Shown here: positions 1 to 47,935 of the stretch, one piece after another
Position numbering within the stretch: the first letter of the stretch is position 1
Layout: every line of letters begins with the position of its first letter
NCBI RefSeq assembly: GCF_000142905.1
Contig: NW_013657616.1
Coordinates: 124,001 to 188,000, forward strand
DNA length: 64,000 nt
Direction of reading: 5' to 3'
From: Thecamonas trahens ATCC 50062
Lineage: Eukaryota > Protista > Apusomonadida
Notes under the pieces: model-generated
Told to the model about the DNA's origin: nothing
The model's input: the letters and a program-made list of their open reading frames with translations, nothing else
Database searches by the model: none
Program-made: the position numbers and the translations under genes

Positions 1-563
1 TGATGGTGACCAACCGCACCGGCCTCACATCGGTTTCCGATGCCACTTCGCGCCCCGGTGCCGAGACCTACACCTTTGCCTTTGGCCTGCCCAAGTTCTC
101 ACAGGTGGTCGTCGTCCGCGACGCCGCCGGCGCCGTCGTCACCTTTGACCAGCCGCTGCAGTTCTCGTACACCCACTCGACCGCCTATGACCGCAACGGT
201 GACGCGTCCAACGACGGTGTCCCGGCGCTGCTCAACTACGGTGGCACGGGCGATCTTTGGGGCATTCCCTGGGAGCAGGTCGATTCGAACGGCGACGGTG
301 TGCCCGACCGCTTTGCCCCGGCGTTTGCCATCAAGGACGGCACACCTGTCGGCGGCGACTACGTCATCAAGGGCCTCTTTGGCGACATTGTCCTTGGCGC
401 CGCCACCGTCAACGAGTGCCAGTCCGCCGGTGTCGCCGTCTCGGCGCCCATCCGCCCCGTTCCCAACTCGTACCGCGGCGAGGCCATCTTCCCCCACGAG
501 ACCGCACCCATCCCCGAGATCGCCGACGATCCCAAGGTTGTTGGTGGTGTTGTTCAGGTCTAA
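1..563 (+). CDS. 3' end of a hypothetical protein (5' part outside the window), bacterial-like, with DxNGD motifs
   Basis: Open frame to TAA at 561-563 with strong C-ending codon bias; FDQPLQFSYTHST...YGGTGDLWGIP...DSNGDG...PKVVGGVVQV. Confidence 0.7.
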   Translation, partial: MVTNRTGLTSVSDATSRPGAETYTFAFGLPKFSQVVVVRDAAGAVVTFDQPLQFSYTHSTAYDRNGDASNDGVPALLNYGGTGDLWGIPWEQVDSNGDGVPDRFAPAFAIKDGTPVGGDYVIKGLFGDIVLGAATVNECQSAGVAVSAPIRPVPNSYRGEAIFPHETAPIPEIADDPKVVGGVVQV

Positions 564-768
564 TCCGCCCCCCCCCCCCCCTCACCGGCTGAACTTGGTG
601 GCGGTAAATGCCTTCAATTTTCCCTCAACGACATGTTTAATAATGGTATGCGTGCGTAGGGAGCGAGGGAGCAAGTGACTGATACCCTGCTGCCCGGCCA
701 CGCCCGTCCCAGTCCGTGAACCCCGCCACCCCGTCTCCACGCCCACCACTCTACTCGCCTTGCCCAGC

Positions 769-1919
769 ATGTTCTACTTCTTGGCGTGTCTCCTTGTGGC
801 CTTTGGCCCCTACCCCATGGTATACTATGGCTCCAAGCTGTACGTGTGTGCGTAGCGTAGTGCGTGTGTGTGTGGGGGGGGGGGGGGGAGGGGGGGAGGG
901 GGGATGGGTGGGGACTCACGGGGTGTGTGGGCATGGGTGTGGCTATGTGGGGTTGCTGGTCTTCTGGTGGGGTGGGACTGCTGGACTCGGACTGGCTGGC
1001 TGGCTGGCTGGTTGCTGCTCCTCCTCCTCCTCCTCCTCCTACGTCTGCCTGCTGGACTCGGACTGGCTGGCTGGCTGGCTGGTTGCTGCTCCTCCTCCTC
1101 CTCCTCCTCCTACTCCTCCTGCTGGACTCGGACTGGCTGGCTGGCTGGCTGGTTGCTGCTGCTCCTCCTCCTCCTCCTCCTACTCCTCCTGCTGGACTCG
1201 GACTGGCTGGCTGGCTGGCTGGTTGCTGCTCCTCTTCCTGCTGCTACTCTCATACCAACCACTCTCTTATCTCGCTCTCCATGCACAGCTCCGACTACGC
1301 GTCCACGTCGTTGGTCGTCCGCGGCGCGCTGGGCTACGTCCTCACCTCGACGGCGCACATGATCTTCATGGCAACGTTTCTGCCCGTTGATGCTCACGAA
1401 GGAACCCTCCGCGTCGTCTCGCTCGTCGGGCAGACAATCATCTCGCTCGTCGCCATTGTCGGTGCGCTGGCCACGGTCTCGTCGGCTTCGGGTTCGGACA
1501 AGACCAAGATGAAGGCGCTCGCTCTCGGCTGGGGCGCCGCCGAGGCCCTCGGCAAGGTCCCGCAGATGTGGATGGGCTCGCGGGCCCACGAGATCGACCT
1601 CTCATGCATCGGCCTCGCCATCAAGTCCAACTTTGATGGCATCGCTGCCGTCGGCTTCCTCTACGGCGCCTTCCTCCTCTTCGAGTACGCCTCGTCGCTC
1701 CGCTTCACCTCGGCGCGCCAGTTTGTGCCCTCGCTCTTCCCGCTCACCGCCATCCTCCTCTCCATCAAGTCGGTCGTCCCCGTCGCCCTCTCCGCTCTCG
1801 CCCTCCCGCTCCCGCTCGCCATCGCCACCTCGGCCGCCATCGCCTTTGGCTCGTACTACCTCGCACAATCTGCCTTTGCCATCCATCGCTCCACCCGCTA
1901 CAAGAAGCGCGACCGCTAA
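769..1919 (+). CDS. TMEM147: TMEM147 (BOS complex subunit), 2 exons: 769-839 and 1289-1919
   Basis: ATG 769 MFYFLACLLVAFGPYPMVYYGSKL; GTACGT donor at 840, CACAG acceptor at 1288; in-frame join to SDY...MIFMATFLP...ALGWGAAE...WMGSRAHEIDL, matching TMEM147 motifs. Confidence 0.85.
979..1245. repeat. Intronic minisatellite, about 4 copies of CTGCTGGACTCGGA(CTGG)nTTGCTG(CTC)n
   Basis: Directly visible ~60-70 bp units inside the TMEM147 intron. Confidence 0.9.
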
Positions 1920-2551
1920 AAGCCAGCCGTCCATCATCGTCTACCGCCCGTAGCCTCGCCTGCCGCCCGGCCGCGAACCCTTGCCCGAACCGGGCACGTC
2001 ACCACCACCCTCCTCTGGCCACCCGAACCGCCACAGGCACGGGCACGCCACGCCACTTCACCTTCCCCGCCCCCCCCCCGCCCCCCGGTTACCGGGTAAA
2101 CGGGTAAAGGGTTTAGTTAACTTAACCCTTAAACCCCGTTTTANNNNNNNNNNNNNNNNNNNNNNNNNNNNNNNNNNNNNNNNNNNNNNNNNNNNNNNNN
2201 NNNNNNNNNNNNNNNNNNNNNNNNNNNNNNNNNNNNNNNNNNNGCCCCCCCCCCTTCCCTCCCCCCTTCCCTCTCTCCCTCTCTCCCTCTCTCTCCCCAT
2301 ATCTCCACCCACACACCGCAACCATGCGTATACACCCCCTCCCCTCCCCGCGCCGCCTTGGTCACGATCGATCACCCTTGTGATCGATCGCGTGGCGATC
2401 GTCTCCCTCCTCCCCCTCCTTCCGATCAAAGCCCCCTTCCAATCCCCTCTACCTCCCCCCTTCCCCTTCCACGACCTTTTCTGGCTGTTCACGACCTTTT
2501 CCGTAAAACGGTGAATGGCGGCGGCGTTTCACGACCTTTTTCTGCAAAGCG

Positions 2552-3223
2552 GTGAATGCGGCGGCGGGGCGACTGACCGAGAGCTCACGGTGGTGTTGGT
2601 GGGCGGGGTACTTGCGCAGCGGCGATGAGGCGCTGGTGTACACATGGGTGACAACGGCGAACGGAACCATGAAGGCGCCGTTCTTCCCCAAGGTCGACGA
2701 GATGTCTGTCCTCGAAATCCCGTACTCTGGCGCAGCGCTCTACCGGAACGACTCTGTGCGGATCCACACCTCGCTGGGGAGCTTCACCACGGCGCCGAGG
2801 CCGTACACCGACGGTTCGTCATTTGTGGGCTACTACTCGGTCCTCGTCCACATGCGGTCGGGCAGGATTGTCCGCCTCGAGTACGATGAGGGCTGCTCCG
2901 ACTGCCCCGGATCATGCGTCGGCTCCAACTGCGCCCTCTCGTACGCAGACTACGGCGTGCCGTGCTACGATACCGCCTGCGCTGTCAAGGTCTACCTCGC
3001 CTGGCTCGGGACCGACAAGGACGAGACTGAGCTCGTCTCGGCCTCACTGCTGCCCTCCAACTTTCGCCGCTTTTCTCTCTCAAATGTCCGCAAGGACGCC
3101 TCGTCGGTCTCGGGCAACGCCGTCGCCCGCGCCAGGGAGGATGCTCCCAGCACCCGCTCCTGGTCCGGCTGGCTGGCCTCGTGGTGGCCCTCTGATGCTG
3201 CTTCAGATGCATCGCACTCGTGA
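2552..3223 (+). CDS. Expp1-like conserved protein (5' end uncertain, near gap)
   Basis: FFPKVDEMSVL...GRIVRLEYDEGCSDC...CAVKVYLAWLGTDK...NFRRFSL resembles the plant/amoebozoan Expp1-type family (FRPKVDEISLL...GCxxC...LAFSGTDK...LRQYSL), recalled from memory. Confidence 0.65.
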   Translation: MNAAAGRLTESSRWCWWAGYLRSGDEALVYTWVTTANGTMKAPFFPKVDEMSVLEIPYSGAALYRNDSVRIHTSLGSFTTAPRPYTDGSSFVGYYSVLVHMRSGRIVRLEYDEGCSDCPGSCVGSNCALSYADYGVPCYDTACAVKVYLAWLGTDKDETELVSASLLPSNFRRFSLSNVRKDASSVSGNAVARAREDAPSTRSWSGWLASWWPSDAASDASHS

Positions 3224-3280
3224 TCGGCTACACGGCTTCACCTACTCGGTTTATCGCTTCCCTCGCGCTCGCCAAGCGGC

Positions 3281-4786
3281 TCACCGCCGCAGGAACCAGC
3301 CCCACGCCGCAGCCATGGCCACCATGCTTGGGTACAGCACGCTCGGCGTGCTCATAAACGGCTTCCATCCATCGGCCCACCACCCGCTCGCACTGTCAGC
3401 GTTGTAGCCCCATCCGCCGGCAAAGCCCACACAGGCGCCGGCGACCACAGACATGAGGAAGAGCTGGAAGCGAAAGACGGCCCACTCGGCGGCGCTCGCG
3501 TCGGCCTGCGGATGGCCAACCGTCCGCGCCACAACCTGGACCGCCACAATAGCGCATGCCACCGCCAGCGCTGCCACGCAGCACTCGATCTTGTGAACAA
3601 GCAGGATCCACGCCGCAAGCGTCCACGGGAGCAGGCTCGGTGCGAGGTGGTTGACCACCACCAGCCCGCCGCCGGCCGCAGCCATGCCGACCGTCGCAGC
3701 CACACCCGAGCTCAGTGCCCGCGGCATCAGCCATGACGTTGACGCTGCTGGCACAGGCAGCGCCACACTCGCCATCAGCGCTCGCGCTAGCGAGATCACG
3801 GCATCGCTCGATCGGACGGTGAGCGCAAAGCTGAAGATCGCAAACGCCGCCGTGCTCAGCACCGTCTCCTTGCGGAGCGCACCGAGCCGGGCTTCGAGCG
3901 CAGCAGCCGCAGCGGCCACCCGCTCTGCGCGGCCGGCGATCCGTGCGTGGATGGCGTCAATGTCGTCGCGGAGCTCCTTCAGCTGCTGCCGCGTCTCCGC
4001 CCGCAGGCCGAGCGTCGGCAGCGCGTGCGCGTAGTACTCGGCCAGCTGCTCGTCAAACTCGGCTTGCTGCGCTGCGCTCAGCTCGCGCCGCCGTCTTTCC
4101 CGCTGCACCGTCAGCGCCTTCGCCAGCTCGTCCGCTCCGATCCGTTCCGAGGCCAGCCACCGCTGCGCTCGCGGCGACGCGTTCAACACCACCAGCTCGG
4201 GCGTCGACGCAGCCATCTCCATCTCAATCTCGGGCGTCTTTTGCCCGTCTGCCTCGGCCACCACCACCATCTCGCGAATCGCTCCTCCTGTTCGCTCTTG
4301 GAAAAGCGTTCGCGGAAGGACAACCACGTCCTCCTCCTCGTCGTCGATCACCACACTGGCGCCCGTGCCCGCGCCCTCGCCCGGACCATCACCAGATGCA
4401 ACTACGACACGATCATCCTTGCGTCGGCGTCCTTCGCCAAAGGATCGGCTCCACGCACAACTATGGCAGCAGGCGCACCGACACCGTCGGGCGTAGAGCC
4501 AAGGACCATGTTGGTGATCATGATGATGACAGGGACCAAGATGAGGACGAGGAGTAAGGCCAGAACCACAGCAGCCAGGCCAAGAGCCGACCATCGATCC
4601 GCCAGCACAACGCCAACGGAGCGAGGGCCGATCGGACGAGATCGACCAGATGACGACCATGACCGTGATGATGATGACGATGATGATCATGATCATCGAT
4701 GAGACGATCGAGATGGTAGCCGAGCCAATGGAGGGGAAAGAGCCAAGACAGAACGATGACGTCATCAGTCGGTGGCAGACCTGCAC
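3281..4786 (-). CDS. Hypothetical protein: coiled coil followed by 4-5 C-terminal TM segments (5' end uncertain)
   Basis: 501-aa ORF; heptad-like region ~4150-3870 and hydrophobic stretches to the stop; the N-terminal ~110 aa look less coding. Confidence 0.6.
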   Translation of the reverse strand: MQVCHRLMTSSFCLGSFPSIGSATISIVSSMIMIIIVIIITVMVVIWSISSDRPSLRWRCAGGSMVGSWPGCCGSGLTPRPHLGPCHHHDHQHGPWLYARRCRCACCHSCAWSRSFGEGRRRKDDRVVVASGDGPGEGAGTGASVVIDDEEEDVVVLPRTLFQERTGGAIREMVVVAEADGQKTPEIEMEMAASTPELVVLNASPRAQRWLASERIGADELAKALTVQRERRRRELSAAQQAEFDEQLAEYYAHALPTLGLRAETRQQLKELRDDIDAIHARIAGRAERVAAAAAALEARLGALRKETVLSTAAFAIFSFALTVRSSDAVISLARALMASVALPVPAASTSWLMPRALSSGVAATVGMAAAGGGLVVVNHLAPSLLPWTLAAWILLVHKIECCVAALAVACAIVAVQVVARTVGHPQADASAAEWAVFRFQLFLMSVVAGACVGFAGGWGYNADSASGWWADGWKPFMSTPSVLYPSMVAMAAAWGWFLRR

Positions 4787-4819
4787 TGGGCCATGTCGTC
4801 GATGGGCGATGGTGTGTGT

Positions 4820-4885
<66 letters not shown>
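4820..4885. repeat. (GAT)n microsatellite
   Basis: About 21 perfect GAT units. Confidence 0.95.
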
Positions 4886-4886
<1 letters not shown>

Positions 4887-5130
4887 GGTCAGAGTCGGTC
4901 GAGCACACGCCGCTAGGTACGGCATGGCCGAGTCGACGGGTGTGGAGGTGGTGGGACTGGGGAGACTGGGGAGGGTGGAGCAGAGCATGAGGATGAAGAT
5001 GAGAAGGAGGAAGGCCGAGCAGTTCTGCGCCATGCCGTGCCGGTCGTCCCCACCGTCGTCGTCTGGCTGGCCGACGGGCGAGTTGAGCGCCGAGTCGCCA
5101 AACTGTCGCTTCAATTGACGAACGTTGAGT

Positions 5131-5226
5131 GTTAGATTAATGTTTGGCGGGGGCATGCATTATGGGAACATTAGATTAATGGTTAGCGGGGGCATGCATT
5201 ATGGGAACGTTAGATTAATGGTTGGT
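5131..5226. repeat. 39-bp tandem repeat (TTAGATTAATG...GGGGGCATGCATTATGGGAAC), about 2.4 copies
   Basis: Directly visible. Confidence 0.85.
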
Positions 5227-5354
5227 GCCAACCATGTCGCGATGATCATCGTTGTCGCGCTGATCAACGCAGAGCCATATTGCCATCGCATATCATGTGA
5301 TGATGAACAGCGCCGCGGTTACAAAGGCTTGAGGGTTTACAAAGGCTTGAGGGT

Positions 5355-7844
5355 TTAGGTCTGGGTCTGGGTCTGGGTCTGGGGCTGGGGCTGACCCGGC
5401 TGGGGCTGACCCTCAACATGTTGCAAGGCCGTCAAGGCGAAAGCAGTGTCGGCAGAGACGCTGGCAACCACGGCATCGACGTCTGCTGTCAGCCAAGAGA
5501 GTGGCGCCGAGGCGAGAAACATGTCGCGATAGCCTTCGGTGAGGAGGAGGCCAGCGGCATCGGCGTAGCGCCCGGCTCCGGCGAGATGATGGACGACGTG
5601 AGAGCGGAGGTAGGCGCCATGGCGGTTGTGGCAGGTGCGAGGACAGCCATCCAGCTCGATGGCGTGCTCGGCTCGGTGCCGTAATCTGAAAGGCCAGCAG
5701 CGGCGTTGGCGAGAAGCGCGGCGTGAAAGGGAGCAGCGGCGCAGCGAGGGACCCGCCACTGAAGGTAGTCGTAGAGGAGGGCATGGATCGAATACATGCC
5801 GTCGGTTCGCTCGTCCTGGATGAGCCTGCGCGCCACAAGGAGATCGAGGAGGGCGTCAACTGGATCGTCGAGAGCACCCATTTCGTCGGTGCTGCCAGTC
5901 CAGAGGATGCGGAGGACAGAGGCGCTGACGGCAGCGTCACTGCGGAGGACAACGAGCTTGCGGTACTCGTCGGCGAGGAACGAGATCGAGGACACACAGA
6001 GATGGACGAGTCGGAGATGAGCCTCTGGTGCAGCCACGAGCTTGTCAAAGGCATGCATCAGCCGCGGAAACGAGCCTGGACGCGAGCCAAAGACGGCACC
6101 GATCATGGCGAGGAGGAGTGGCGAGTCGCCGCAAAAACCGCGAGCTGTGCTGCACGGTCTGGGAGCCGATCCAGCGGCAAGTCGGCCCACTTGGAAAGCA
6201 TGAGCAGAGCGGTATCGACGTCGAGGTCGCCAAGCTCGTATATCGGCCCGGAAAGTGGGGCGTTGTCTAGTGCCCGACTCGTTCGCGAGGTGACGAGGAC
6301 GGTGACCGCGAGTTGCGTGGTGGCAAAGGCGGAAGTGGCGGCAGCCAGCGCTTGCGCCACCGCGCTCGCCTCGCAGGCGTCGTCGAGTACAACAAGAACA
6401 TGACGCGGCGCATCGCGATGGGCTGTTGCAAAGGTAGAAGCGGCATCGGCGGCGCGGGCCAGCTCTGTGGCCACAAACCGCTCGTCCGGCAGCGCACCGA
6501 GGGCGATCCAGAAGAGGCCACATGCAAAGGCGCGACGGACAGCGTCATCGCGGACAATGCCAATGACTAGGTACGTCTTGCCAGTTCCGGATGGACCAAC
6601 AACGCCGACAACGCCCGCAACAGCGGGAGGAGGGCCTCGACAATGGCGGCGTGATCGGCGGAGCGCGGGACAATGTCGGCGATGGGCAGCTCCGGGACCG
6701 AGGCGTCGAGCGGGCCGAGGAGCAGGAGCTCGTGCAGAGCCTCGAGGCGAGTGACAAGCGTTTCAAACGACGGGCGGCGGGTCGGATCGGGGGCGACGCA
6801 AGTGGTGATGAGCGGATCCACAAGGGTGGCGAGGAACGAGGATCGAGAGGTCGGAGTTGGCGGTAGGAGGAGAGCGGCGTAAGCGTTGGTCTCGCGGAAT
6901 GCGGCGTATCGGGCCTTGTGGCGGTAGACGACCTCTGCGGCGGTGACGCCAAAGGCAAAGACGTCGACGGCCGGGGTGGGGCGGCCGCCGACAAACAGCT
7001 CGGGCGCCATGTACCTGCGGGTGCCGGCCATCATGGGCGCTGACATGGACTCGATGACGTGGGCGAGGCCAAAGTCGGCGATCTTGACCACGGCGCGCGA
7101 GGCGTCGACAAGAATGTTGGCCGGCTTGAGGTCGCGATGGAGGATGCCGCGGATGTGCAGGTACGCCATGCCCGACGCCACTCCGCGGAGGAGGCGGACC
7201 CTCTCGGCGTGGCTCAGCACCACCTCCGAGTAGAACAGCAGCGTCCTCAGATCGGTGTGGAGGAGTTCGAGGACAATGGCCGGCGGTGAGATGGAGACTG
7301 CCAGCAGCGTCACTGTGTTGGGGTGTGCCAGCTGCGACAAGACCTTGACCTCCTCCACCAGAGCCTGCCGGACCCGCATCAGCTCGGTCGCCTCGCTCTC
7401 GTCGAGCGTCTCAGCCTCTTTCTCCGTCATGTCTTGGGTCACAGCCGTAGATGTGACTGTTTTGTTGCCGCTCTGCCCATCGTCGGCATCGTCTTGGCTC
7501 TGCCCATCATGATCATGCTCGGGAGGATGATTATCAGCAACAGCATCAGCATGCTCAGGATGATGCTGATGACGACCGTGCTGCCGCCTGTGCAAGCGAA
7601 GTCGCTTGACGGCAACAGGCGTGCCCGCCCATACGCCGCGAAAAACATCGGCAAAGGCGCCCGAGCCGATGGTCTCGACAATCCTCAGCTCGTCCCAAGA
7701 GATGTCGTGCGCTCGGCGAACTGAGGCCGTGTCGTCCGACGACATGCCCCCGCCGCCGGCCCCTTCCCACACATCCTCCTCGCTTCCTCGCCTTTGTCCA
7801 GCCATCGGCACGCCACTCATAGTTTCTGTAGAAAACGTTGACAT
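5355..7844 (-). CDS. TKL-family protein kinase fused to an NB-ARC (Apaf-1-like STAND NTPase) domain; split by 3 single-base frameshifts
   Basis: Kinase motifs IGSGAFADV, VAVKRL, HRDLKPAN, DFG, YMAPE, DVFAFG; then across frames GPSGTGKT (Walker A), LFWIALG, VLVVLDDA (Walker B), VLVTSR, CGDSPLLL (GLPL), YSIHALLYDYL (MHD), YLRSHVVHHL (helical domain). Confidence 0.85.
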
Positions 7845-7980
7845 GATTCCCTCTGTAGAGTTTGATGTCTCTAGCAAGACGTATCCGACCGCTGGAGCCT
7901 CCACACTGCCGGGCCTCTGCACGTCGAGTGCGACTCTCCGCGTCGCCAACCCCAACGATAACCACGGGAACGATTAACAC

Positions 7981-8233
7981 GATAAATCCCAATGATCTCA
8001 ACGATTAACCACGACAACGATGAATCCCAATGATCTCAACGATTAGCCACGACAACGATGAATCCCAATGATCTCAACGATTAACCACGACAACGATGAA
8101 TCCCAATGATCTCAACGATTAACCACGACAACGATAAATCCCAATGATCTCAACGATTAGCCACGACAACGATGAATCCCAATGATCTCAACGATTAACC
8201 ACGACAACGATAAATCCCAATGAACTCAACGAT
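7981..8233. repeat. 38-bp minisatellite, about 6.6 copies, in a divergent-promoter interval
   Basis: AATCCCAATGATCTCAACGATTA(A/G)CCACGACAACGAT(G/A) with period 38 (7985, 8023, 8061...8213). Confidence 0.95.
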
Positions 8234-8345
8234 TCGATTCGAGCGATTCTTTCTTCTCTTGCACAGCTACGGCGCAGCCGACACCTCTCCCCTCCCCCCT
8301 CCCCCCCCCCCCCCCCCCTCCCGCCCATCATCCCCAACGTATATC

Positions 8346-10516
8346 ATGTTCAAAGGCCTCCTCAAAGCAAGTGGCGGTGGAGATGGCGGCGGAATAGCGG
8401 CGACCATGGAGGCGCACGCGACAGCTGAGCGATGGCCCGGACGGCCAAACATGTAGTGAAGCGAGGACACAGTGTTCGCAAGGCCATGACCAAGCTACGC
8501 AAGGCCATCACTGCGCATGCATCTGCTCTATCTGCTGCTGCTCGGCTTGATACAGATCTCATCAATGTCATCACCATCGCCATGGACTCGGCTCAGTCTC
8601 TCCGCCTCGATTCGGCTGCTCGGGCTCTCACTCCTGCTCCTCCCCGTCCTCCTCCGCCCAGCGATCAGTTCGATGCTGATGATCAAGAGAGCCAGCATGA
8701 GGCTTATGACGCGACTCGGGCAACTCGCTCGACCGACTCGCAGGGAAGACTGCTTGACGATGTCAATGCTGGTCTCGCTCACATCGCGGCGGTGCTCGAT
8801 GATGCGAGCGCGAGAAAGACGTCTGAGGCGCAGGTCTTTGCAACCGCCCTGGTGGGACGGGTCGAGTCGCTGCTGACAGCTCTGGACGAGGCACAGGTTC
8901 GCCACAAAGCTCTGCTTGACGATCGATACAAGGCGCTCAACTCGCGAGTCGTCTCGTTTGTCAAGGAGGCGACCAAGGCGAGGAAGCGACTCGCCCGGTT
9001 TGTGCGCAAGTACGGTTCGGATCCGGAGGAGCTCAACACTCGCCGTGTTGCGTACGAAGATCTGGTTGTTGACACCATCCACACCGAGCAGAACATGTTG
9101 TATGCCGCCAAGCAGGCACAGGAGTTTGCTGCCAAGCTCCTGCGCTCCGCCATTGTTGCCATTCGCTCGATCTTTACCGGCTTTGTCGACGGCCTCCACG
9201 CCTACCTCGTCACCGTTCGTGGCGTCCATCTTGCTTCGGCCGAGGCCCTCGCCCGCTCTTTCCCCGAGTGGGAGTACCTAACGCTTGCTGCCCACGTCCT
9301 CCCGCCTTCGGCTGAAGCCGCCATCTCCGATCCGGTCTCCACCGCCCAGCTCTTGCCGAGCGGGCTCGACACCCTTGTCGAAGCCGCCTTCCCAGGTGTC
9401 CTCATTGAGCCAAGCTCACTCTCTACCCAGGCTGCACTCTCGACTGCCGAGGCCGAGATCGACGCTACTGACGATGTCGACGCCGAGGCCGAGGCCGAGG
9501 CCGGCGCCACCGACGATGTCGACGAGACCTGGGACTCGACTACGTCTGCGCTGGCCGAGCCGGTCGAGGATTTGCTCGAGGGCGCCGCGCTACCGGACCT
9601 TGGCCCGGCCAGCGCCTCGTCGACCGATCGCATCCTTCATCTCCCGCTCTTCCAGCCCGTCACCATGCTGTATGACTACACAGCCATGACCGCCGATGAG
9701 CTCTCGTTCGCAGCCGGCGAGATCCTCATGTGGAACGGCGCCGAGTCGTCTGGCTGGGGCTATGCCATGCGCCCGGCAACTGCTGCAGAGGGCTTCTTTC
9801 CGCTCAACTACGCAGACTCGGCCGCCCTTCGCGCGCTGCCCACACCTCCGCCCATGCCCGCTTCTCGCCAGGCCTTTCCAGCCCATCCACAAGTTTTTAT
9901 CTTTCCCGACCACGATGCCGACCGCGATGCCGACCGCGCCGGCCCGTCGGCATCGACGGCATCGACCACGCCGGCTGCCAGCGGCGGCGCCACCCCGCCG
10001 CCGCTGTACTCGGCCATGTTTCCCAGCGGCCCACGTGGCTCGGCCGCCGCCGCCTCGCTGCCGCCGCTTGAGATCCCGCAGGGCATGGCGGTTGCTGAAG
10101 GTGTGCCGAGCACCCCGCCGGTCCTCAACACCCGTGCAGAACTCCTCCGCGACATCCGCGCCCAGCGTCTCGGCCGTGTTGTCCTCCGCGCGCCGGCTGA
10201 GCCTGCCGATGAGGCCGCCAGCGTCGAAGACGTCACGCCTGACACCATTGCTGCACCGACCCGCGGCGATCTTCTTGCACAGATCCGCAACGGGGCTGCT
10301 CTCCGCCGCACTCATGCTCCGGCAAGGGTAGCCGCTTCGTCATCAACAACATCCTCCCTCTTGCAAGACCTTCGCGTCGCTGCTCGGGATCGCCGCCGCG
10401 AGGCTATTACTCGGCAACTGCAAGATCATGTCGGCGCCTCATCAAGCAGGCATTACGACTATCTGCAGCGTAACAGCCTTCCGTCGTGGTCGTCATCTGA
10501 TGACGAGTCGTGGTAG
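8346..10516 (+). CDS. BAR-like coiled coil + SH3 + Pro-rich + WH2 x2 + central/acidic-Trp tail protein (probable frameshift near 8434)
   Basis: SH3 VTMLYDYTAMTADELSF...GW...GFFPLNYA; WH2-like RAELLRDIR and RGDLLAQIRNGAALRRT; C-terminus SSSDDESW; ATG 8346 joins the 8432 ORF with one added G. Confidence 0.8.
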
Positions 10517-11134
10517 GTTTCACCGGCCACCCGTCCCCCCGCTTGTAAGAGTTGCCCCTACCCTGACAGTCCGATCATGACGCTACAACCTGATCTCCCG
10601 TGCATCATCACCTCACCGACCAGCCACTCGCACATGCGCGCGCACGGCACACGTGCACGCGATGCAAACCTCAACAAACCACTCTCGCCGGTACCTCTCT
10701 CGCTCGCTCAGGCGCCAGAAAAAGTACGCAAAGGTGCCTGACATGGATGACTGACAACCAACCATCAATTAACCCATACATATCATCAATGTCGTCCGGC
10801 CGCACATGCGAGTTTCTTGCCCCCCGCCCACCTGCTGCTCGCACAGGCGAGACAAGGAGACTTCCTCGCTCGCTCCCTCCCTCCCTCGCTCCCTCCCTCC
10901 CTCCCTCGCTCGCTCGCTCCCTCCTTCCCTCCCTCCTTTCCTCCTTCTTCCTCTCCCCATCCTCCTTCTATCGATGGTGGAGGTGACTCGGCGAAAAAGG
11001 ATGGCGATTCTCGGCGACACGCACGCGCTTCACAGCCCCCCCCCCCCGCCCCCCCCTCCTCCCGCCCTCCTTACCCTCCTCACCCTCCTAACCCTCCTAC
11101 CCCCCCCCCCCCCTACCGTGTAGACTAGGTCGAC

Positions 11135-14100
11135 ATGTCGTCCATAGGCGAGGTTAGCCGGAGCACTACGATTCCTAAGAGGTCTTGGCTCGGCAAGCGG
11201 AGCCACCAGACCAAGGTCTTGCTGCGGAAGAATGCCATTCTCGCCAAGCGCAACTGGAAGTCGACGCTCTCGTTTGTCATCATTCCGTCTGCAATCATGA
11301 TTCTGCTCTTCCTCCTCTCGCTCATCGTCAAGACGCACTCGGATTTGACCAAGAACGTTCCCAATCCGCCGTCAAAGGCCATTTCCACTCAGCTCCCGCC
11401 GTGCAAGATCGGCGAGGGCAAGTCACATTGCTACACCTTTATCTATAACTACGCTACCGTGCCTGTGGTGGCGAGAATGATGGAAAAGGTGAGGCTCGCG
11501 GCGGGCGTGCCGGCGGCGAATGTGCATGGTATCCCAGGCGGCGATCTGGAGACGCTCAACAAGTTTATGTACGACGAGTACAACGTGACCCAGGCCGCGT
11601 ACGTGTTCAACTTTGACAACGCCACCCACTCTGATAGCCTTCCGAAGTCGGGCAACATCTACACGCTTGCCATCAACGAGACGCTCTTCTCAGACTGCGA
11701 CAACGACCTCAAGTTCTACGAGTGCGCCAGGTCGGCCGCGACATTGCCGTGCCCATGATGATGCTCCTCGACGAGGCCATTCTCGGCGAGGTGTCCGGCC
11801 GCCAGGGCGGCCCGGCGGCCTCGATTGTTGCCGCCATCACCGAGTTTGCCCACCCGGTCATCTTCAACTTTAACGTCAAGTCCTCGAGCGCCGGCCTCTT
11901 CCTCATGTTTGCCACCATGTTCCCGCTCGTCCTCATGCTCATGCAGGTTGTGGCCGAGAAAGAGGCCAAGCTCAAGTTCTCCATGTCGCTCATCGGCGTC
12001 ACCGGCGCCGCGTATTGGACCTCGTGGTGGGTCACCTTCCTCGCCATGTTCTTCACCGCAGACCTGCTCCTCATTGCCGTCTGCTACATCTTTGACTTTG
12101 GCATTGTAACCAAGTCGGCCTTTGGCATCACCTTTTTCCTCGTTGTCCTCTTCTCGCTCTCGATGATCTCCACCGGCTTCTTCTTCTCGACCCTTTTCCG
12201 CAACGTCAAGTCTGCCCGCATGATGGCCCTCTTCTACCTGTTCCTCTTTGGCCTCTTCTCCTCCATCGGCCAGTTTGTGTATGGCGACGGCACCTCGGTC
12301 TCGTCCTTCTGGCGCTACCTCCTCGCCCTCTTTCCGCCGGTCATCTTCAACAAGTCGCTCGTTGACCTCACCAACGCCTCGTCCGGCCAGTCGGTTGTTG
12401 TCGGTGTCACCTGGGCCCAGCGCTCCAACTACACCGAGATCTTCCCCTTTACGCAGGTCTTCAACTGGCTCGTCTTTGACACGATTGTGTACTTTGTCCT
12501 CGCGTGGTACCTCGACATTGTCCTGCCCAATGCCATGGGTGTCCGCCGCTCGCCGTTCTACCCGTTCTCACCACGCTATTGGGGCTTTGGCTCTTCGGCG
12601 TCGCCCAAGCCGCGGCCCGGCGCCGCCTGCGAGCTCCCGCAGGCTGACGGCTACGTCGGCGGCGACGCCGGCGTCGACGACCCGGACGTCCAGGCCGAGG
12701 CCGCCCGCGTCCGTCTCAACCAGTTCCACGAGGAGCCGGCGCTTGTCATCCACAACCTGCGCAAGGTATTTGGCTCGTTTGTGGCCGTCGACAACCTCTC
12801 CATCTCCATCGCCCGTAACTCGGTCCTCGGCCTGCTTGGCGCGAACGGCGCCGGCAAGTCGACCACCATCAACATGCTCACCGGTGGCGTCGAGCCCTCG
12901 TCCGGCTATGCCGTCCTCAACCTCGCTTCTGACGGAAACACGCCCGGCCGCTCACTCACTACCCTCACCGACCGCGATGCCATCCGTGACCACCTCGCCG
13001 TCGTCCCGCAGTTTGACGTCCTTTGGGACGACCTCTCTGGCGAGGAGAACCTCGCTGTCTTTGCCGGCCTCAAGGGTCTCGCCGGAGCTGACCTCGGCTA
13101 CGAGGTTCGCACCCGCCTCGATGAGGTCGATCTCCAGGGCGACCGCACCGGCCTCGCTTCTTCGTACTCGGGCGGCATGCGTCGCCGCCTCTCGGTCGCC
13201 ATGGGCCTCACCTGCGATCCGGCCATTGTCCTCCTCGACGAGCCGACGACGGGCATGGACCCGGTCTCGCGTCGCAAGGTCTGGGACGTCATCGAGCGCG
13301 CCAAGAAGCGGCCCAATCGTGCTCTCACTCTCACTACCCACTCGATGGAGGAGGCCGACGTCCTCTCCGACCGCATCGCCATCATGGCCAACGGCCGCAT
13401 TCGCTGCATCGGCACCTCGCTTCACCTCAAGCGCAAGTTTGGCACCGGCTACCGCGTCCAGGTCGTTGCTGCTCCCGAGCACATTACCGACGTCTGGGCT
13501 GCCTTCCTCCAGCGCTTCCCGCACTACCCTGTCGTCGACACCACGCCCATGCACTTTACCGTCGAAGTCGCGTCGACCCAGGTACCCGAGCTTCCAGGCG
13601 TCTTTGAGTACCTCCAGTCTGCGGCAAACATCAAGGACTTCCACGTCTCACTCACCACTCTTGAGGACGTCTTCCTCCGCGTTGCTGAGGATGCCCAAGG
13701 CGAGGAGTTTACCACCGTCTCGGGCGAGGCGCCGCTCGAGGACCCTGCCGCCGCCTCTTCCGTCAATCACGACATCCCGGTTGCCCAGCCGGTTGGCGAG
13801 CAGGCACCAGGCTCGGGTTCGGGCCCGGCCTCTGCCGCAGACACGCCGCGCTCCGACACGACTGCGCCCTCGCCGCCGCCACCGCCACCCGCCGCCACCG
13901 GCCGCCTCAAGCCGCGCTACGGCCTGCAGGTCAAGGCCCTCCTCGCCAAGTCGTACCACCTGCAGAAGCGGCGCAAGGTGACCAACTGCTGCCAGATCTG
14001 CTGCCCCTCGTTCATCGTCTTTATCCTCATTATGGTGCAGCTCTTTGTCATCTCCTCGCTCAACCGCACCGTGCAGGCCTCGCCGAACCCGACGCCCGCG

Positions 14101-16499
14101 CCCATGAACTGGCTCTTCTTCCCCAACGACGACTTTCCCAACCAGCTTGGCTGGTCCGTGCCGGCCTCGCCTTCGCCCGCCGAGCTCGCCGTCGGAAACA
14201 GCTTGTACATGGCGCCTTACACCAATCCACCGCTCGAAGAGCTATCCACCAACATCTCGTTTGTCAAGACTCAGTTCAGCTCGCTCGCCGCAATGCAGTC
14301 GACGCTCTACGCCGCGCACTTTGGCGGCGGCGGTTGGGCCGGCGGCTTTGACATTCTCTCGGCTACGGACAACGCGTTCTCGGTCAACCTCCTGTTCAAC
14401 CGGACCAAGGCCAAGTTCTACGACTCGCTGCCGGCGCTCTTTGCCTCGGCCTCCACCGCTTTTTCGCAACTCGCCCTCAACGCCTCGGCGCCGTACGAGC
14501 ACTCGTACGTCAAGCTCCCGGTTCGCGAGCACGAGGTCAAGATTGACATTGTCTCGTTCCTCGCCGCCATCCTCTTTCCGCTCATTCTCTTCTTCCAGTT
14601 CCCGCTTGTGGTCGGCTCCATCATGCACGACAAGGAGCACAAGCTCATTGAGATCCTCAAGATGCAGGGCATGAAGATGTCGGTTTACTGGCTCGTCAAC
14701 TTTGTCTTTTCGTTCATCCTCTACATCGGCGTCCTTGTTGTGCTCTTTGCCCTTGGCTTTGTCTTCCGCTTTGACTTTTTCATCCGCAACTCGTTCCCCA
14801 CCTACTTCATCCTCTTCCTCCTCTGGGGCGCCACCATGATTGCGCTTGCCTTTGTCTTCACCACCCTCTTTGGCCGCGAGTTTATCGCCACCGTCGTCTC
14901 GTACCTCGTCGTCATTGTCTCGTGGATCTCGGGCTCCATCCTTGTCGGCCAGGTCGAGGGCAACGGCGCGCAGAGCTTCTTCTTCTCGCTCTACCCGTTC
15001 TTTGCCTTTCAGCGCGGCGTCGGCTACCTCGCCGCCGCCGCCACCGCAGGCTCGGAAGGCCTCACGCTTGCTACGGTCAACTCGGGCGACGCCTACCTCG
15101 GCAACATCTACGGCTACCTCGCCGTCGAGCTTGTCGCCCTCCTCCTCCTTGCTTACTACCTCGACCAGGTTGTGCCGGCAGGCTTTGGCGTTACCAAGTC
15201 GCCCATCTTTTGCCTCAAGCCCTCGTACTGGCGCGGCTCCAAGGCGGGTTCGGACGCCGACGAGGAGCGCGCCCTCATGTCTGGCCCGCTTCTCCAGGAC
15301 AAGTATCCCATCGAAGACGAGGACGAAGACGTCGCGGCCGAGCGGCGCTACATCCTCGACCCGAGGCACGCCGGGACCAACGCCATTGCCATGCGCCACC
15401 TCCGTAAGGTCTACGACGGCGGCAAGGTCGCCGTTCGCAACGCCACCTTTGGCATCCGCCGCGGCGAGTGCTTTGGCCTTCTCGGCCACAACGGCGCCGG
15501 CAAGACCACCATCGCCTCGATGCTTTCTGGCCTCATCGAGCCGAGCTACGGCGACGCCCTCGTCGCTGGGTACTCGATCCGCGAGTCGATGGACGAGATC
15601 TATGGCGTCCTCGGCGTCTGTCCGCAGCACGACATCCTCTGGCCGACCATGACCGCCGAGGAGCACCTCTACCTCTACGGCCGCCTCAAGCGCATGACGG
15701 GTGCCGAGCTTAAGCGTGCTGTCGCCCGCACTCTCGACGAGCTCCACCTGACGTACGTCCGCAAGCGCCTCGTTGGCCGCTTCTCGGGCGGCATGAAGCG
15801 GCGCCTTTCCATCGGCATCGCGCTCATCGGCTCGCCGCAGGTCGTCTTCCTCGACGAGCCCACCACTGGCCTCGACCCAAGAACCGCCGCGAGGTGTGGA
15901 ACATCATCTCCCGCGCCTGCCGCTCCGGGAATGCCTCGGTCGTCCTCACCTCCCACTCGCTCGAAGAGGCCGAGGCCCTCTGCTCCCGCATTGGCATCAT
16001 GGCCTCAGGCGCCCTCGAGTGTGTCGGTTCGTCCGGCCACCTCAAGGCCAAGTTTGCCGCAGGCTATCGCCTCTCGCTCTCAATGCACCCCGACCACATT
16101 GACGCCGCGCCCGCCGCCGTCGCCGCTATCCTCGACCTCCTCCCGCGCGCCTCGCACATGCCGCACTCGCTCGGGCCCAACCAGCACTTCCACGTCCCCG
16201 AGGGCTCATTTGACCTCGCAGAGCTCTTCACTACCATGGAGGCTCGCAAGGACGGGCTCCACGTCGCAGAGTGGAACATCGCCCAGACCACCCTTGAAGA
16301 CGTCTTTATCCGCATCGCAGAGGCCGGCTCGGCAAAGGACGCCCTCGCTCGTTCGCTCACCGACTCGACCATCTTTGCCTCAAGCACCGCCTCGCCGCCC
16401 CGTCCCGGCGCCCACGACGCCTACATCCCACCGGTGGCCATCCCCTCGCGCGTCGTCGACGACGACGACTACGAGTACGACGATGAGCCTGACCGGTGA
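11135..16499 (+). CDS. Full-length ABCA-family transporter (TMD-NBD-TMD-NBD), 2 frameshifts (~11727, ~15877)
   Basis: Two GxNGAGK[ST]T Walker A motifs, [YF]SGGM[RK]RRLS signatures, LDEPTTG, THS[ML]EEA, LKxKF, TTLEDVF; EKE/DKE-K-L motifs after large exocytoplasmic loops. Confidence 0.95.
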
Positions 16500-46238: not shown

Positions 46239-47691
46239 ATGATGCGGCGGTCAAAGCTGAAGGTGCAGAGCATGGTGACGACACAGGCAGAGTGGGAGGA
46301 GGCCTTGACCTTTGATGGTCTTCTTGGTATGTGACTCGAGAAGGACCGCAGGCGTGCACTTGGGAGAGGCAACCGGTTGGCCGCGCGTGGTCGTGGTCGT
46401 GGTTGGTCGACAGGGCGGGCGGGGGCGGGCGTGGGTGACTCGGACGAGTGAGCGGGCGGAATGGTGGGTGAGCGAGCGGTGGATTCGTGGAGCGGCGCGA
46501 CGAAATTTTTGTAATTTTAGTGGCTGGCGGCGTGGCTCGGCGAATGGCGGAGCGCACCAGAAAAGAAAAAGAAGAGGTACTGGGACACAGGGTAGACTCA
46601 TGGAGCAAGAGTGTGTTTTGATGGAAGTGGTGGATGTTGCTGGATGGGCTGGACCGTGCGGGGCGCTGGAGCGGACGTATCGCAAGCTGTTTGTGGATCT
46701 GGGTAATGAGGGTGTGCGGTTTGTGACGGCGATGGCGAGCGGCATTGAGGAGCTTGCCGAGTTTGAGTCGCAGTCGCAGCCGACGGTGCTGATGTTCAAG
46801 CGCGGGCGGCAGTTTGCGACGATCCGTGGAGCACGGGCGGCCGAGGTGGAGGAGACGGTCGAGGTGTACCAGCCCAAGGAAGGCGATGCCGATGTGGAGC
46901 CCGAGTACGGTGCGCCGCACCTCTCGCTGCGGCAGCAGGCCGAGGCCAAGCAGCTTGCTGAGGCTGCCAAGAACGCACCGGTGGTGGTGGTGGCGGACGA
47001 AGACGAGGAGGAAGCCAAGGCACATGCAGCAGCGACCAAGATCCAGGCCGTCTTCCGCGGGCACAAGGTCCGGACTGGGGCGGAGCCGCTGGACGGCGAC
47101 GCGTTGGTGGGATCGGCGGCAGGAGCAGCGGTCGTGCCGGGCACTGATAGCGCGGACGCGGGTGGCGAGGACGAGGCTGAGGGTGAGGCCGCGGCGGTGG
47201 GAGCAGATGCAGGCGCAGCAGGCGGCGAGAACGCGGAGCCCAACGCCGAGGCCGGCGAGGCGAGCGAGGCGAACGGGCTGAGCGCGAGTGAGGCGCGGGC
47301 CTTCCTCAGCAGCGCCAAGCCGATGCTCGGGCTTGTGGCCAACGACAAGACCAAGCAGGTGCTGGTGACGGACGTCAAGGCGGGGTCGCCAGCCGAGGCG
47401 GCCGGGATTGTGGTGGGCGACATCATCGAGGGAGTGGGCGGCAAGGCGGTGAAGTCGATGAAGGCGCTCTCGGCTTCGTTCCGGTTTGTCTTCCCCGGCG
47501 CCGTGACCAAGTTCCGCATTCTCCGCAAGTCCGAGGCAGGGCGGACGCACGTGGTGACCAAGGGCAAGCGACTGGCCATGCCTGTTGTCATCGGGGCCAA
47601 GGGGCTGAAGATGCCTGAGCTGGACGAGTATGTCGCCGCAGCCGGGAGCGAGTGGGTGCGGGAGCAGGCTGCCATCCGTGCGCGTGGGTAA
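46239..47691 (+). CDS. NME8/9-type thioredoxin-like domain + IQ motif + PDZ domain; probable intron 46327-46627
   Basis: Q..VTTQAEWEE...GLL|VVDVAGWAGPC...F..A.A..I..L...PTVLMF..G....IRGA; AATKIQAVFRGHKVR; LGL...VLVTDVKAGSPAEAAGIVVGDII. Confidence 0.75.
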
Positions 47692-47935
47692 ACTTGACTT
47701 TGACGTGGCTGTGGCTGTGGCTGTGGCTGTGTGTGGGGGGTGTTGGGGTGCAGGGGATAAAATTTGTAGCTGTGATGGGGGACCACCCCCCATCTACACA
47801 TGTCGTTGCAGGTCACGGGGGGGGGGGAGGGAGGAGGTGGCCGATCGTGGGAGGAGGGGGGGAGGGGAGAGGGGGGGGGGGCAGCAGGGGCAAGGCGGAC
47901 GCGGGAAGACAGACTTGTCGGCGAGCCGAGTGAGT

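What the first reader, a model, noticed from the sequence alone, without database searches (positions are those of the whole stretch)
5355..7844. Hidden kinase-NB-ARC (NLR/Apaf-1-like) fusion lacking a sensor-repeat domain
Seen: joining four frames gives a catalytically complete TKL kinase followed by the ordered NB-ARC motifs (Walker A GPSGTGKT, FW, LVVLDD, VTSR, GLPL-like CGDSPL, winged helix, MHD-like IHALL) and an Apaf-1-like helical domain, ending in QP/QT repeats with no WD40/TPR/LRR. Established: STAND NTPases oligomerise to activate N-terminal effectors in animal, plant, fungal and bacterial immunity. Inference: an oligomerisation-activated kinase and candidate protist immune or cell-death receptor that senses through a partner in trans. 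The ORF track shows it only as a kinase plus fragments.
Basis: partly seen in the sequence, partly recalled or inferred. Interest (0 to 1): 0.8.

Follow-up and report, generated by a model that had tools for sequence, protein, structure and literature searches.

The report
Kinase–NB-ARC gene split by assembly errors
This is one gene of the flagellate Thecamonas trahens that joins a protein kinase to an Apaf-1-type ATPase switch and has no sensor repeats; it looks broken only because the draft genome dropped three single bases, and it is the shortest of six such genes in this genome.

Summary
On the minus strand, 7844-5355, a complete kinase is followed in three other frames by a P-loop NTPase domain, a helical plus winged-helix part and a short helical tail. 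All four pieces are collinear with an intact 2114-aa kinase-NB-ARC-WD40 paralogue.

Each frame break equals one missing base. I first leaned towards a pseudogene, but this draft assembly (Thecamonas trahens, gene AMSG_10798) drops single bases in conserved genes throughout. I found 29 "one base missing" calls against 2 "one base extra" in 107 kb of coding DNA. They are enriched at homopolymers, and Pfam profile continuity confirms them in a Peptidase_M16 gene and a sulfate permease gene. The breaks are therefore most likely artefacts (about 0.8).

The public 644-aa model patches them with fake introns of 65, 41 and 35 nt, one of which deletes the P-loop.

The gene ends at TAA with no WD40, TPR or LRR. 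Five intact paralogues carry WD40 (four) or RWD (one).

Kinase-headed NLR-like proteins are already listed for fungi. Earlier notes of this scan, on other DNA of this genome, flagged the sister genes and the systematic base loss.

The immune role is untested. Moderate to low interest.

The parts
6570..7844 (-). Kinase open frame, from the first ATG at 7844 to the out-of-frame stop at 6567-6569. The true coding frame leaves it at about 6620-6630.
   Evidence: PF07714 E 7.6e-42, PF00069 E 1.5e-41. It is 42% identical to the kinase of paralogue C30.
6750..7691 (-). Protein kinase domain of TKL-like Ser/Thr type, with all catalytic motifs: GSGAFA, VAVK, alphaC Glu, HRDLKPAN, DFG and APE.
   Evidence: Motif coordinates; alignments to paralogues.
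7368..7595 (-). In-frame His/Asp-rich low-complexity insert of about 75 aa between strand beta3 and helix alphaC of the kinase.
   Evidence: Paralogue C30 has about 10 residues here. C3 and C11 also have kinase inserts.
6631..6749 (-). Kinase-to-NBD linker, conserved with paralogue C30.
   Evidence: tblastn alignment, C30 residues 582-621.
6619..6630 (-). Frame break 1. One base is missing in or beside a CCC or GGG run. It falls between the ALLP residues and the strand that leads into the P-loop.
6142..6618 (-). NB-ARC nucleotide-binding domain: Walker A 6597-6574, Walker B 6399-6379, TSR sensor 1 at 6300-6283.
   Evidence: Pfam NB-ARC 26.9 bits, above the cut-off of 23.5. hhalign to paralogues E 3.6e-14.
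6131..6141 (-). Frame break 2. One base is missing at a T5 run. Eight nucleotides stand where paralogue C30 has 3 residues.
5651..6133 (-). ARC part: helical domain 1 with a GLPL-like CGDSPL motif, winged-helix domain with an MHD-like IHA motif (5797-5774), and the start of helical domain 2.
   Evidence: hhalign E 3.5e-10. PF21296 scores 19 bits, below its cut-off of 27. The AlphaFold model has pLDDT 81, and the top Foldseek hits are Apaf-1 1z6t and 3sfz with TM 0.68-0.78.
5649..5650 (-). Frame break 3. One base is missing just after the conserved Trp, in a GG context.
   Evidence: Placed by the family motif W..GP....AYY.Q..V.HL.
5412..5648 (-). Helical domain 2-like segment (GAYLRSHVVHHL at 5618-5583). 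It is shorter than in the WD40 paralogues.
   Evidence: hhalign 69% probability, E 4.4e-5. tblastn to C30 residues 988-1021.
5355..5411 (-). QP/QT repeat tail encoded by a hexanucleotide microsatellite, followed by the TAA stop at 5357-5355.

Best explanation
The locus is one gene of Thecamonas trahens, public model AMSG_10798. In the organism it most likely encodes a single protein of about 830 residues.

The protein has these parts, in order:
- a TKL-like Ser/Thr kinase;
- a linker conserved in the family;
- an Apaf-1-type NB-ARC module (NBD, helical domain 1, winged helix, short helical domain 2);
- a QP/QT low-complexity tail, with no repeat sensor.

The three frame breaks are most likely single bases dropped by the draft assembly, which does this throughout the genome. 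The gene is the shortest of six kinase-NB-ARC paralogues.

How it works is inferred, not shown. The NB-ARC module would hold the protein as a closed ADP-bound monomer. Nucleotide exchange would let it oligomerise. Oligomerisation would bring the N-terminal kinases together for trans-activation.

With no WD40 domain, the trigger must come from elsewhere. The candidates are another protein (as CED-9 controls the WD40-less CED-4), mixed oligomers with the WD40-bearing paralogues, or an intrinsically loosened switch (MHD Asp replaced by Ala).
For: One collinear gene:
- tblastn of intact paralogue C30 runs through all four frames in order. The gaps at breaks 1 and 2 (32 and 8 nt) are too short for an intron.
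- hhalign profile columns are contiguous across break 2, at 211 and 213.
- The homology frame is the best codon-usage frame in each piece, with ordinary per-codon scores of 0.10-0.35 against a window mean of 0.32.
- There are no in-frame stops, and the Walker A, Walker B, sensor 1 and MHD-His motifs are kept.

The breaks are artefacts:
- In 43 predicted genes (106.6 kb) a codon-model Viterbi finds 29 one-base-missing calls and 2 one-base-extra calls. They are enriched at homopolymers: runs of 4 or more near 34% of events against 9% of random coding positions, p 3e-4.
- The detector is symmetric and clean in simulation: it recovered 57/60 deletions and 58/60 insertions, with no false calls.
- Pfam continuity proves such breaks in housekeeping genes. 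Peptidase_M16 matches profile 1-43 and 45-149 on pieces 2 nt apart. Sulfate_transp matches 2-89, 91-138 and 147-379.
- Neighbouring genes in this window have the same breaks, at 15878, about 19200, about 21343 and about 42364.
- Two of the 43 genes carry 3 or more events, so three in one gene is within range.

Fold: the ARC piece models as Apaf-1-like.

Family: five intact paralogues carry kinase plus NB-ARC.
Against: - Three breaks within 1 kb is on the high side. At about 0.26 events per kb, P(3 or more) is about 0.025 per gene, and lower if some Viterbi calls are intron read-throughs.
- Breaks 1 and 3 sit at runs of only 2-3 bases.
- The NB-ARC part keeps only 18 of 29 family-invariant residues. 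That is 56-61% in leave-one-out tests, against 71-91% for the WD40 paralogues and 54% for the RWD paralogue.
- The MHD Asp is Ala, and the RNBS-D-like LR.RF motif is lost.
- GC3 is lower after the kinase: 0.67-0.74 against 0.84.
- No transcript, read-level or second-assembly evidence was available.
- Only one of the five AlphaFold models was confident.
- The mechanism rests on analogy alone.
Confidence: 0.75

Rival explanations
1. The frameshifts are real. In this reading the locus is a decaying copy of a kinase-NB-ARC(-WD40) gene that has lost its sensor. At most it yields a stand-alone kinase of about 425 aa that ends at the stop at 6567-6569, and the NB-ARC remnant is untranslated.
For: - All three breaks lie after the kinase, and the kinase core has the strongest codon bias (GC3 0.84, LLR 0.40 per codon).
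- It is the most divergent family member at invariant positions.
- The sensor is missing and the MHD Asp is lost.
- Gene families of this kind turn over quickly.
- Three breaks in 1 kb is denser than the background rate.
Against: - The same one-base-missing signature pervades conserved housekeeping genes of this assembly.
- All three breaks are the artefact type. Real indels would include insertions and longer deletions.
- There are no stop codons in the homology frames, and codon usage is still ordinary there.
- All NTPase motifs are intact.
Confidence: 0.15
2. The public model AMSG_10798 is correct. In this reading three real mini-introns of 65, 41 and 35 nt are spliced out, giving a 644-aa protein that lacks the kinase N-lobe and the P-loop.
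For: All three have GT...AG ends and restore the frame. This is the deposited annotation.
Against: - Read in the homology frame, the 'introns' encode the P-loop strand and motif, and the W.D.P...LP..A segment that aligns to the paralogues.
- All three lengths are 2 mod 3, exactly what a one-base loss needs.
- Lengths of 35-41 nt are very short.
- The model's last exon junction uses a frame that the paralogue profile does not support.
Confidence: 0.02
3. The missing bases are real in the genome and are restored at expression, by programmed -1 ribosomal frameshifting or by insertion of a nucleotide into the transcript. This would act genome-wide, not only at this gene.
For: The bias is strikingly one-directional, 29 missing to 2 extra, in otherwise intact genes. 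Other first-stage notes of this scan raised the same question.
Against: - There are no slippery heptamers at the sites.
- The events cluster at homopolymers, as base-calling errors do.
- The window has six N gaps in 64 kb, so this is a draft-quality assembly.
- No such mechanism is known for nuclear genes (my own knowledge).
Confidence: 0.02

Closest known systems
Kinase-NB-ARC paralogues of the same genome (G000 C30, C53, C3 and C11 with WD40; C15 with RWD)
   Same: Same order of kinase, conserved linker, NBD, helical domain 1, winged helix and helical domain 2. Kinase identity is 39-46% and NB-ARC identity about 26%.
   Different: There is no C-terminal WD40 or RWD module and a shorter helical domain 2. 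The protein is about 830 aa against 1073-2382 aa. It is more divergent at family-invariant residues, and it is broken into four frames in the assembly.
Apaf-1 / CED-4 apoptosome ATPases
   Same: NB-ARC with an Apaf-1-like winged helix and a conserved MHD histidine. The model of the ARC piece matches Apaf-1 best, and CED-4 is also found. CED-4 likewise has no WD40 sensor and is controlled in trans.
   Different: The N-terminus is a kinase, not a CARD. The MHD Asp is Ala. No caspase partner is implied. Sequence identity is only about 20%.
Fungal NLRs with an N-terminal PKinase domain
   Same: A protein kinase stands in the effector position of a NOD-type STAND NTPase. It is listed as a rare canonical class (PMC4986451, PMC12258605).
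   Different: Fungal NLRs carry ANK, TPR or WD40 repeats. This protein has none. It comes from an apusomonad, for which I found no published NLR survey.
Bacterial NB-ARC-WD40 proteins of Chloroflexi (Roseiflexus, Chloroflexus)
   Same: They are the best database matches to the family's NB-ARC module, queried with paralogue C15: about 33% identity over 85% of the region, with Pfam NB-ARC and Apaf-1-like WHD.
   Different: None of the listed hits shows a kinase domain; some have TIR or a trypsin-like peptidase instead. They carry WD40 arrays. The comparison used the paralogue, not this locus, whose own NB-ARC part found only itself.
ROCO kinases (LRRK2 type)
   Same: This is a works-like comparison only: a kinase fused to a regulatory NTPase switch in one chain (my own knowledge).
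   Different: The NTPase is a Roc-COR GTPase, not a STAND ATPase. The domain order differs and there is no sequence relationship.

Membership tests
NB-ARC / AP-ATPase clade of STAND NTPases (Pfam PF00931) | Walker A motif GxxxxGK[ST] | tested here: met
   GPSGTGKT at 6597-6574.
NB-ARC / AP-ATPase clade of STAND NTPases (Pfam PF00931) | Walker B motif hhhhDD, and sensor 1 Arg (TTR/TSR) | tested here: met
   VLVVLDD at 6399-6379 and VLVTSR at 6300-6283. Both align to the paralogue motifs.
NB-ARC / AP-ATPase clade of STAND NTPases (Pfam PF00931) | Profile score above the Pfam gathering threshold | tested here: met
   The NBD piece alone scores 26.9 bits against a cut-off of 23.5, covering profile positions 19-139. 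The joined protein was not scored.
NB-ARC / AP-ATPase clade of STAND NTPases (Pfam PF00931) | GLPL motif, and a winged-helix domain with an MHD motif | tested here: inconclusive
   - CGDSPL keeps the Pro and Leu.
- IHA keeps the His, but the Asp is Ala.
- PF21296 scores 19 bits, below its cut-off of 27.
- hhalign to the paralogues gives E 3.5e-10.
- The model matches Apaf-1 HD1-WHD with TM 0.68-0.78.
NLR in the strict tripartite sense (effector, NOD, repeat sensor) | C-terminal LRR, WD40, TPR or ANK repeat sensor | tested here: not met
   - The ORF ends at TAA 5357-5355.
- All three frames close within about 100 nt.
- Paralogue WD40 regions give no tblastn relic in 1-12000.
- The downstream ORFs have no Pfam hit.
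Apaf-1 / CED-4 apoptosome family | N-terminal CARD that recruits a caspase | tested here: not met
   The N-terminus is a protein kinase, and Pfam finds no CARD.
Eukaryotic protein kinase superfamily (PF00069 / PF07714) | Complete catalytic core: Gly-rich loop, beta3 Lys, alphaC Glu, HRD...N, DFG and APE | tested here: met
   Pfam E values are 1e-41 to 1e-42 and all motifs are located. The third Gly of the loop is Ala, and a 75-aa insert precedes alphaC. Activity was not tested.
Thecamonas kinase-NB-ARC paralogue family | Collinear kinase, conserved linker, NB-ARC and helical domain 2 in one gene | tested here: met
   Collinear tblastn over the four frames and hhalign of the three pieces.

The most novel reading that the evidence does not exclude
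The gene is intact and acts as a sensor-less partner in a small network. It would form mixed oligomers with the four WD40-bearing kinase-NB-ARC paralogues, or be released by a bound inhibitor as CED-4 is. The outcome would be an apoptosome-like platform whose output is kinase activation. This would be a kinase-based NLR/Apaf-1 signalling system in a unicellular sister lineage of animals and fungi.
Probability: 0.15. Interest if true: 0.6.

Novelty: new member of a known kind. Interest (0 to 1): 0.3.

Why it matters
Apusomonads are the closest unicellular relatives of animals plus fungi. A family of Apaf-1-type switches headed by kinases there bears on how NLR-like and apoptosome-like signalling was assembled before multicellularity. 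A natural sensor-less member would be a convenient minimal construct for testing whether such a switch can drive a kinase.

The practical lesson is larger than the gene. This public assembly loses single bases in roughly half of the sampled genes, and its annotation hides the losses behind fake mini-introns. Domain surveys based on the deposited proteome will therefore miss or mutilate motifs, as happened here with the P-loop and the kinase N-lobe.

Tried and rejected
- **GC3 profile and per-segment GC1/2/3.** These were meant to date decay. The paralogues span the same range, so they did not discriminate.
- **My early argument that the assembly is clean.** I reasoned from long ORFs and from 106 of 129 whole kinase domains that three breaks must be real. 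I reject this. In this GC-rich genome wrong frames stay open for 60 or more codons, and a rate near 0.2 per kb still leaves most 780-nt domains whole.
- **Homopolymer run-length census.** Inconclusive.
- **First switch-point finder.** It picked ORF edges, so I replaced it with LLR profiles and a Viterbi model.
- **PDB sequence searches of the NBD and ARC pieces.** Nothing significant.
- **PADLOC.** Only generic kinase hits.
- **Word searches for an independent or intact copy.** Only the public model P0001 came back, so there is no second source for the sequence.
- **Literature.** Nothing on the sequencing method of this assembly or on apusomonad NLRs.
- **Programmed frameshifting at the three sites.** No slippery heptamer is present.
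- **Steps not run.** The large representative-protein search was left out because the verdict does not rest on an absence of relatives.
- **Joined protein.** The four pieces were never joined into one sequence, so no search or fold of the full-length protein was made.
Full report
**1. What is there**

The window is GC-rich eukaryotic DNA. The best database match to the kinase ORF names it: uncharacterized protein AMSG_10798 of Thecamonas trahens ATCC 50062 (P0001, 644 aa). The window is positions 124001-188000 of scaffold C64 in a 28.7-Mb assembly of 131 scaffolds.

A six-frame reading of the minus strand between 8100 and 5200 gives four pieces:
- A 462-aa kinase ORF at 7955-6570, with its first ATG at 7844.
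- A piece in the next frame with GPSGTGKT, FW, VLVVLDD and VLVTSR.
- A piece in a third frame with CGDSPLLLAMIG and MYSIHALL.
- A piece back in the kinase's frame with GAYLRSHVVHHL. It ends in QP/QT repeats and TAA at 5357-5355.

Each change of frame has the same sign and equals one missing base. Pfam results are as follows:
- The kinase scores E 7.6e-42.
- The NBD piece alone scores NB-ARC 26.9 bits, above the cut-off of 23.5.
- The Apaf-1-like winged helix scores 19 bits, below its cut-off of 27.

**2. It is one collinear gene, not a kinase plus debris**

A search of the genome itself with PF00931 finds 21 NB-ARC loci. I fetched the long ones. Five are intact single ORFs with kinase followed by NB-ARC:
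- C30, 2114 aa, with WD40.
- C53, 1921 aa, with WD40.
- C3, 2350 aa, with WD40.
- C11, 2382 aa, with WD40.
- C15, 1073 aa, with an RWD domain instead.

tblastn of C30 against the window is collinear through all four frames:

| C30 residues | Window coordinates |
|---|---|
| 357-621 | 7367-6621 |
| 647-797 | 6588-6142 |
| 801-951 | 6133-5762 |
| 988-1021 | 5630-5529 |

At the second break, 8 nt stand where C30 has 3 residues. Even the kinase-NBD linker is conserved.

Profile comparison of each piece with an alignment of the five paralogues (A1) gives:
- E 3.6e-14 for columns 50-211.
- E 3.5e-10 for columns 213-365.
- E 4.4e-5, probability 69%, for columns 349-438.

A codon-usage log-likelihood model trained on the paralogues makes the homology frame the best frame in every piece. 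Per-codon scores there are ordinary.

I folded the ARC piece with an alignment of paralogues and bacterial relatives. It gives helical domain 1 plus a winged helix. The best model has pLDDT 81, but the other four models score 57 or less. Its top PDB matches are Apaf-1 (1z6t and 3sfz, TM 0.68-0.78), then the plant NRC2 and CED-4.

Following the scan's rule, I searched and folded the pieces one by one, by reference. I never joined them, so no search or fold of the full-length protein was made.

**3. No sensor**

- After the TAA all three frames close within about 100 nt and the GC content drops.
- The WD40 parts of the paralogues find nothing in window 1-12000.
- The next minus-strand ORFs (4518-5156 and 3284-4888) have no Pfam hit.
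- The helical domain 2 segment is shorter than in the WD40 paralogues.

On the present assembly the protein ends without any WD40, TPR or LRR.

**4. Are the frame breaks real?**

I first leaned towards a pseudogene, for these reasons:
- Other NB-ARC genes are intact over as many as 2390 codons.
- At least 106 of the 129 scored kinase domains are whole in one frame.
- The locus is the most divergent family member. It keeps 18 of 29 invariant residues, or 56-61% in leave-one-out tests, against 71-91% for the WD40 paralogues.

That view did not survive calibration. Comparing the two giant receptor paralogues of this window showed a frame change with only 5 nt for 2 residues at about 21343, at a T5 run. 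Reading the repeat motifs showed two more such breaks:
- about 19200, at a G6 run inside a beta-helix repeat;
- about 42364, inside an FG-GAP repeat.

I then wrote a Viterbi model with codon scores and explicit states for "one base missing" and "one base extra".
- In simulation it recovers 57 of 60 deletions and 58 of 60 insertions, and makes no call on five clean ORFs.
- On all the DNA I held (43 predicted genes, 106.6 kb of coding sequence) it missing-base events and 2 extra-base events.
- 20 of the 43 genes are affected, and 2 of them carry three or more events.
- Events are enriched near homopolymers. A run of 4 or more lies near 34% of events against 9% of random coding positions. A run of 5 or more lies near 17% against 1%. 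Mann-Whitney p is 3e-4.

Pfam continuity proves several events in genes that cannot plausibly be dead:
- A Peptidase_M16 gene matches profile 1-43 on one piece and 45-149 on the next, 2 nt apart.
- A sulfate permease matches 2-89, 91-138 and 147-379 across two breaks 160 nt apart.
- An ABCA-type transporter breaks right after its Walker B motif LDEPTTGLD.

A few Viterbi calls are intron read-throughs; the one at 54978 sits on a GTGAGT donor. The rate of about 0.26 per kb is therefore an upper figure. Even so, three events in a 2.4-kb gene has a probability of the order of 0.01-0.025 per gene. That predicts on the order of a hundred such genes in this genome.

All three breaks here are of the artefact's type. 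One lies at a T5 run, like the receptor break. The window has six N gaps in 64 kb, which marks a draft. After my own tests, I found that other first-stage and follow-up notes of this scan report the same systematic one-direction base loss elsewhere in this genome.

I put the artefact reading at about 0.8 and a real pseudogene or kinase-only gene at about 0.15. No read-level or second-assembly data were within reach. The only database protein matching the locus is the public model itself.

**5. The public model is wrong in detail**

Reconstructing AMSG_10798 on the window gives exons 7430-6642, 6576-6191, 6149-5521 and 5485-5358, with GT-AG "introns" of 65, 41 and 35 nt. All three lengths are 2 mod 3.
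- The first "intron" removes the strand and most of the P-loop.
- The second removes a segment that aligns to the paralogues.
- The third junction keeps a frame that the family profile does not support.
- The model also starts inside the kinase insert, so it lacks the Gly-rich loop and the beta3 lysine.

**6. How it probably works (inference)**

The NTPase motifs are complete and the MHD histidine is kept. The kinase has every catalytic residue, although the third loop Gly is Ala and a 75-aa His/Asp-rich insert precedes helix alphaC.

By analogy with Apaf-1, CED-4 and plant NLRs, the NB-ARC module would switch from a closed ADP form to an oligomer. That would bring the N-terminal kinases together for trans-activation.

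Without a sensor, control must come in trans, through mixed oligomers with the WD40 paralogues, or from a loosened switch. The MHD Asp is Ala, a position whose change is known to activate plant NLRs (my own knowledge). None of this was tested, and an immune or death role is a guess.

**7. Comparison and novelty**

- A PKinase N-terminal domain is a listed, rare class of fungal NLRs (PMC4986451; PMC12258605 notes it "has been considered canonical ... despite being rare").
- CED-4 is a natural WD40-less Apaf-1 relative.
- The family's NB-ARC module, queried with paralogue C15, is most similar to NB-ARC-WD40 proteins of Chloroflexi. Identity is about 33%, and none of the listed hits shows a kinase.
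- I found no paper on apusomonad NLR-like genes. The only paper that mentions both Thecamonas and NB-ARC does so in separate contexts.
- The scan had already flagged the sister genes on other scaffolds.

This is a new, reduced member of a known kind.

**8. Verdict**

- The locus is most likely an intact gene masked by assembly errors.
- Interest is moderate to low for the gene itself. The systematic base loss, and the fake introns that hide it, are the more consequential finding for anyone using this genome.

Noticed in passing
window 15878, ~19200, ~21343, ~42364; L020:1711-1714; L017:2871-2874 and 3032-3035: The assembly drops single bases inside conserved genes: an ABCA-type transporter, two giant FG-GAP/beta-helix receptors, a Peptidase_M16 and a sulfate permease. 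Over 107 kb of coding DNA I counted 29 missing-base events and 2 extra-base events, enriched at homopolymers.
   Followed up: yes
window 5358-7430 (public model AMSG_10798 = P0001): The deposited gene model patches the three breaks with GT-AG 'introns' of 65, 41 and 35 nt. It starts inside the kinase, so the deposited protein lacks the kinase N-lobe and the Walker A motif.
   Followed up: yes
window 7979-8234 and 8284-8335: A 38-nt tandem repeat of 6.7 copies at 95% match, then a C-rich tract. Both lie in the intergenic region between this gene and the divergently transcribed BAR-SH3-like gene at 8432-10516.
   Followed up: no
window 4820-4886 and 5132-5357: A perfect (ATG)22 microsatellite lies inside the downstream minus-strand ORF. 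Repeats of 39 nt and 18 nt lie directly after the TAA of the kinase-NB-ARC gene.
   Followed up: no
window 3284-5102, minus strand: The downstream neighbour has good codon usage but no Pfam hit. It is a coiled-coil-like region followed by hydrophobic helices. The Viterbi model calls up to four frame events in it, some of them in low-complexity sequence.
   Followed up: partly
P0121-P0171 (hits): The nearest database relatives of the family's NB-ARC module are bacterial NB-ARC-WD40 proteins, mainly Chloroflexi, some with TIR or trypsin-like heads. This hints at a bacterial-type or very old module. No tree was built.
   Followed up: partly
window 11700-11760 and 47680-47930: One junction is ambiguous: either an upstream ORF stop overlapping an ATGATGATG start, or a base loss at about 11721. 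The other is a likely true intron of about 250 nt that starts with GTAAAC and contains a (GTGGCT)n repeat.
   Followed up: partly
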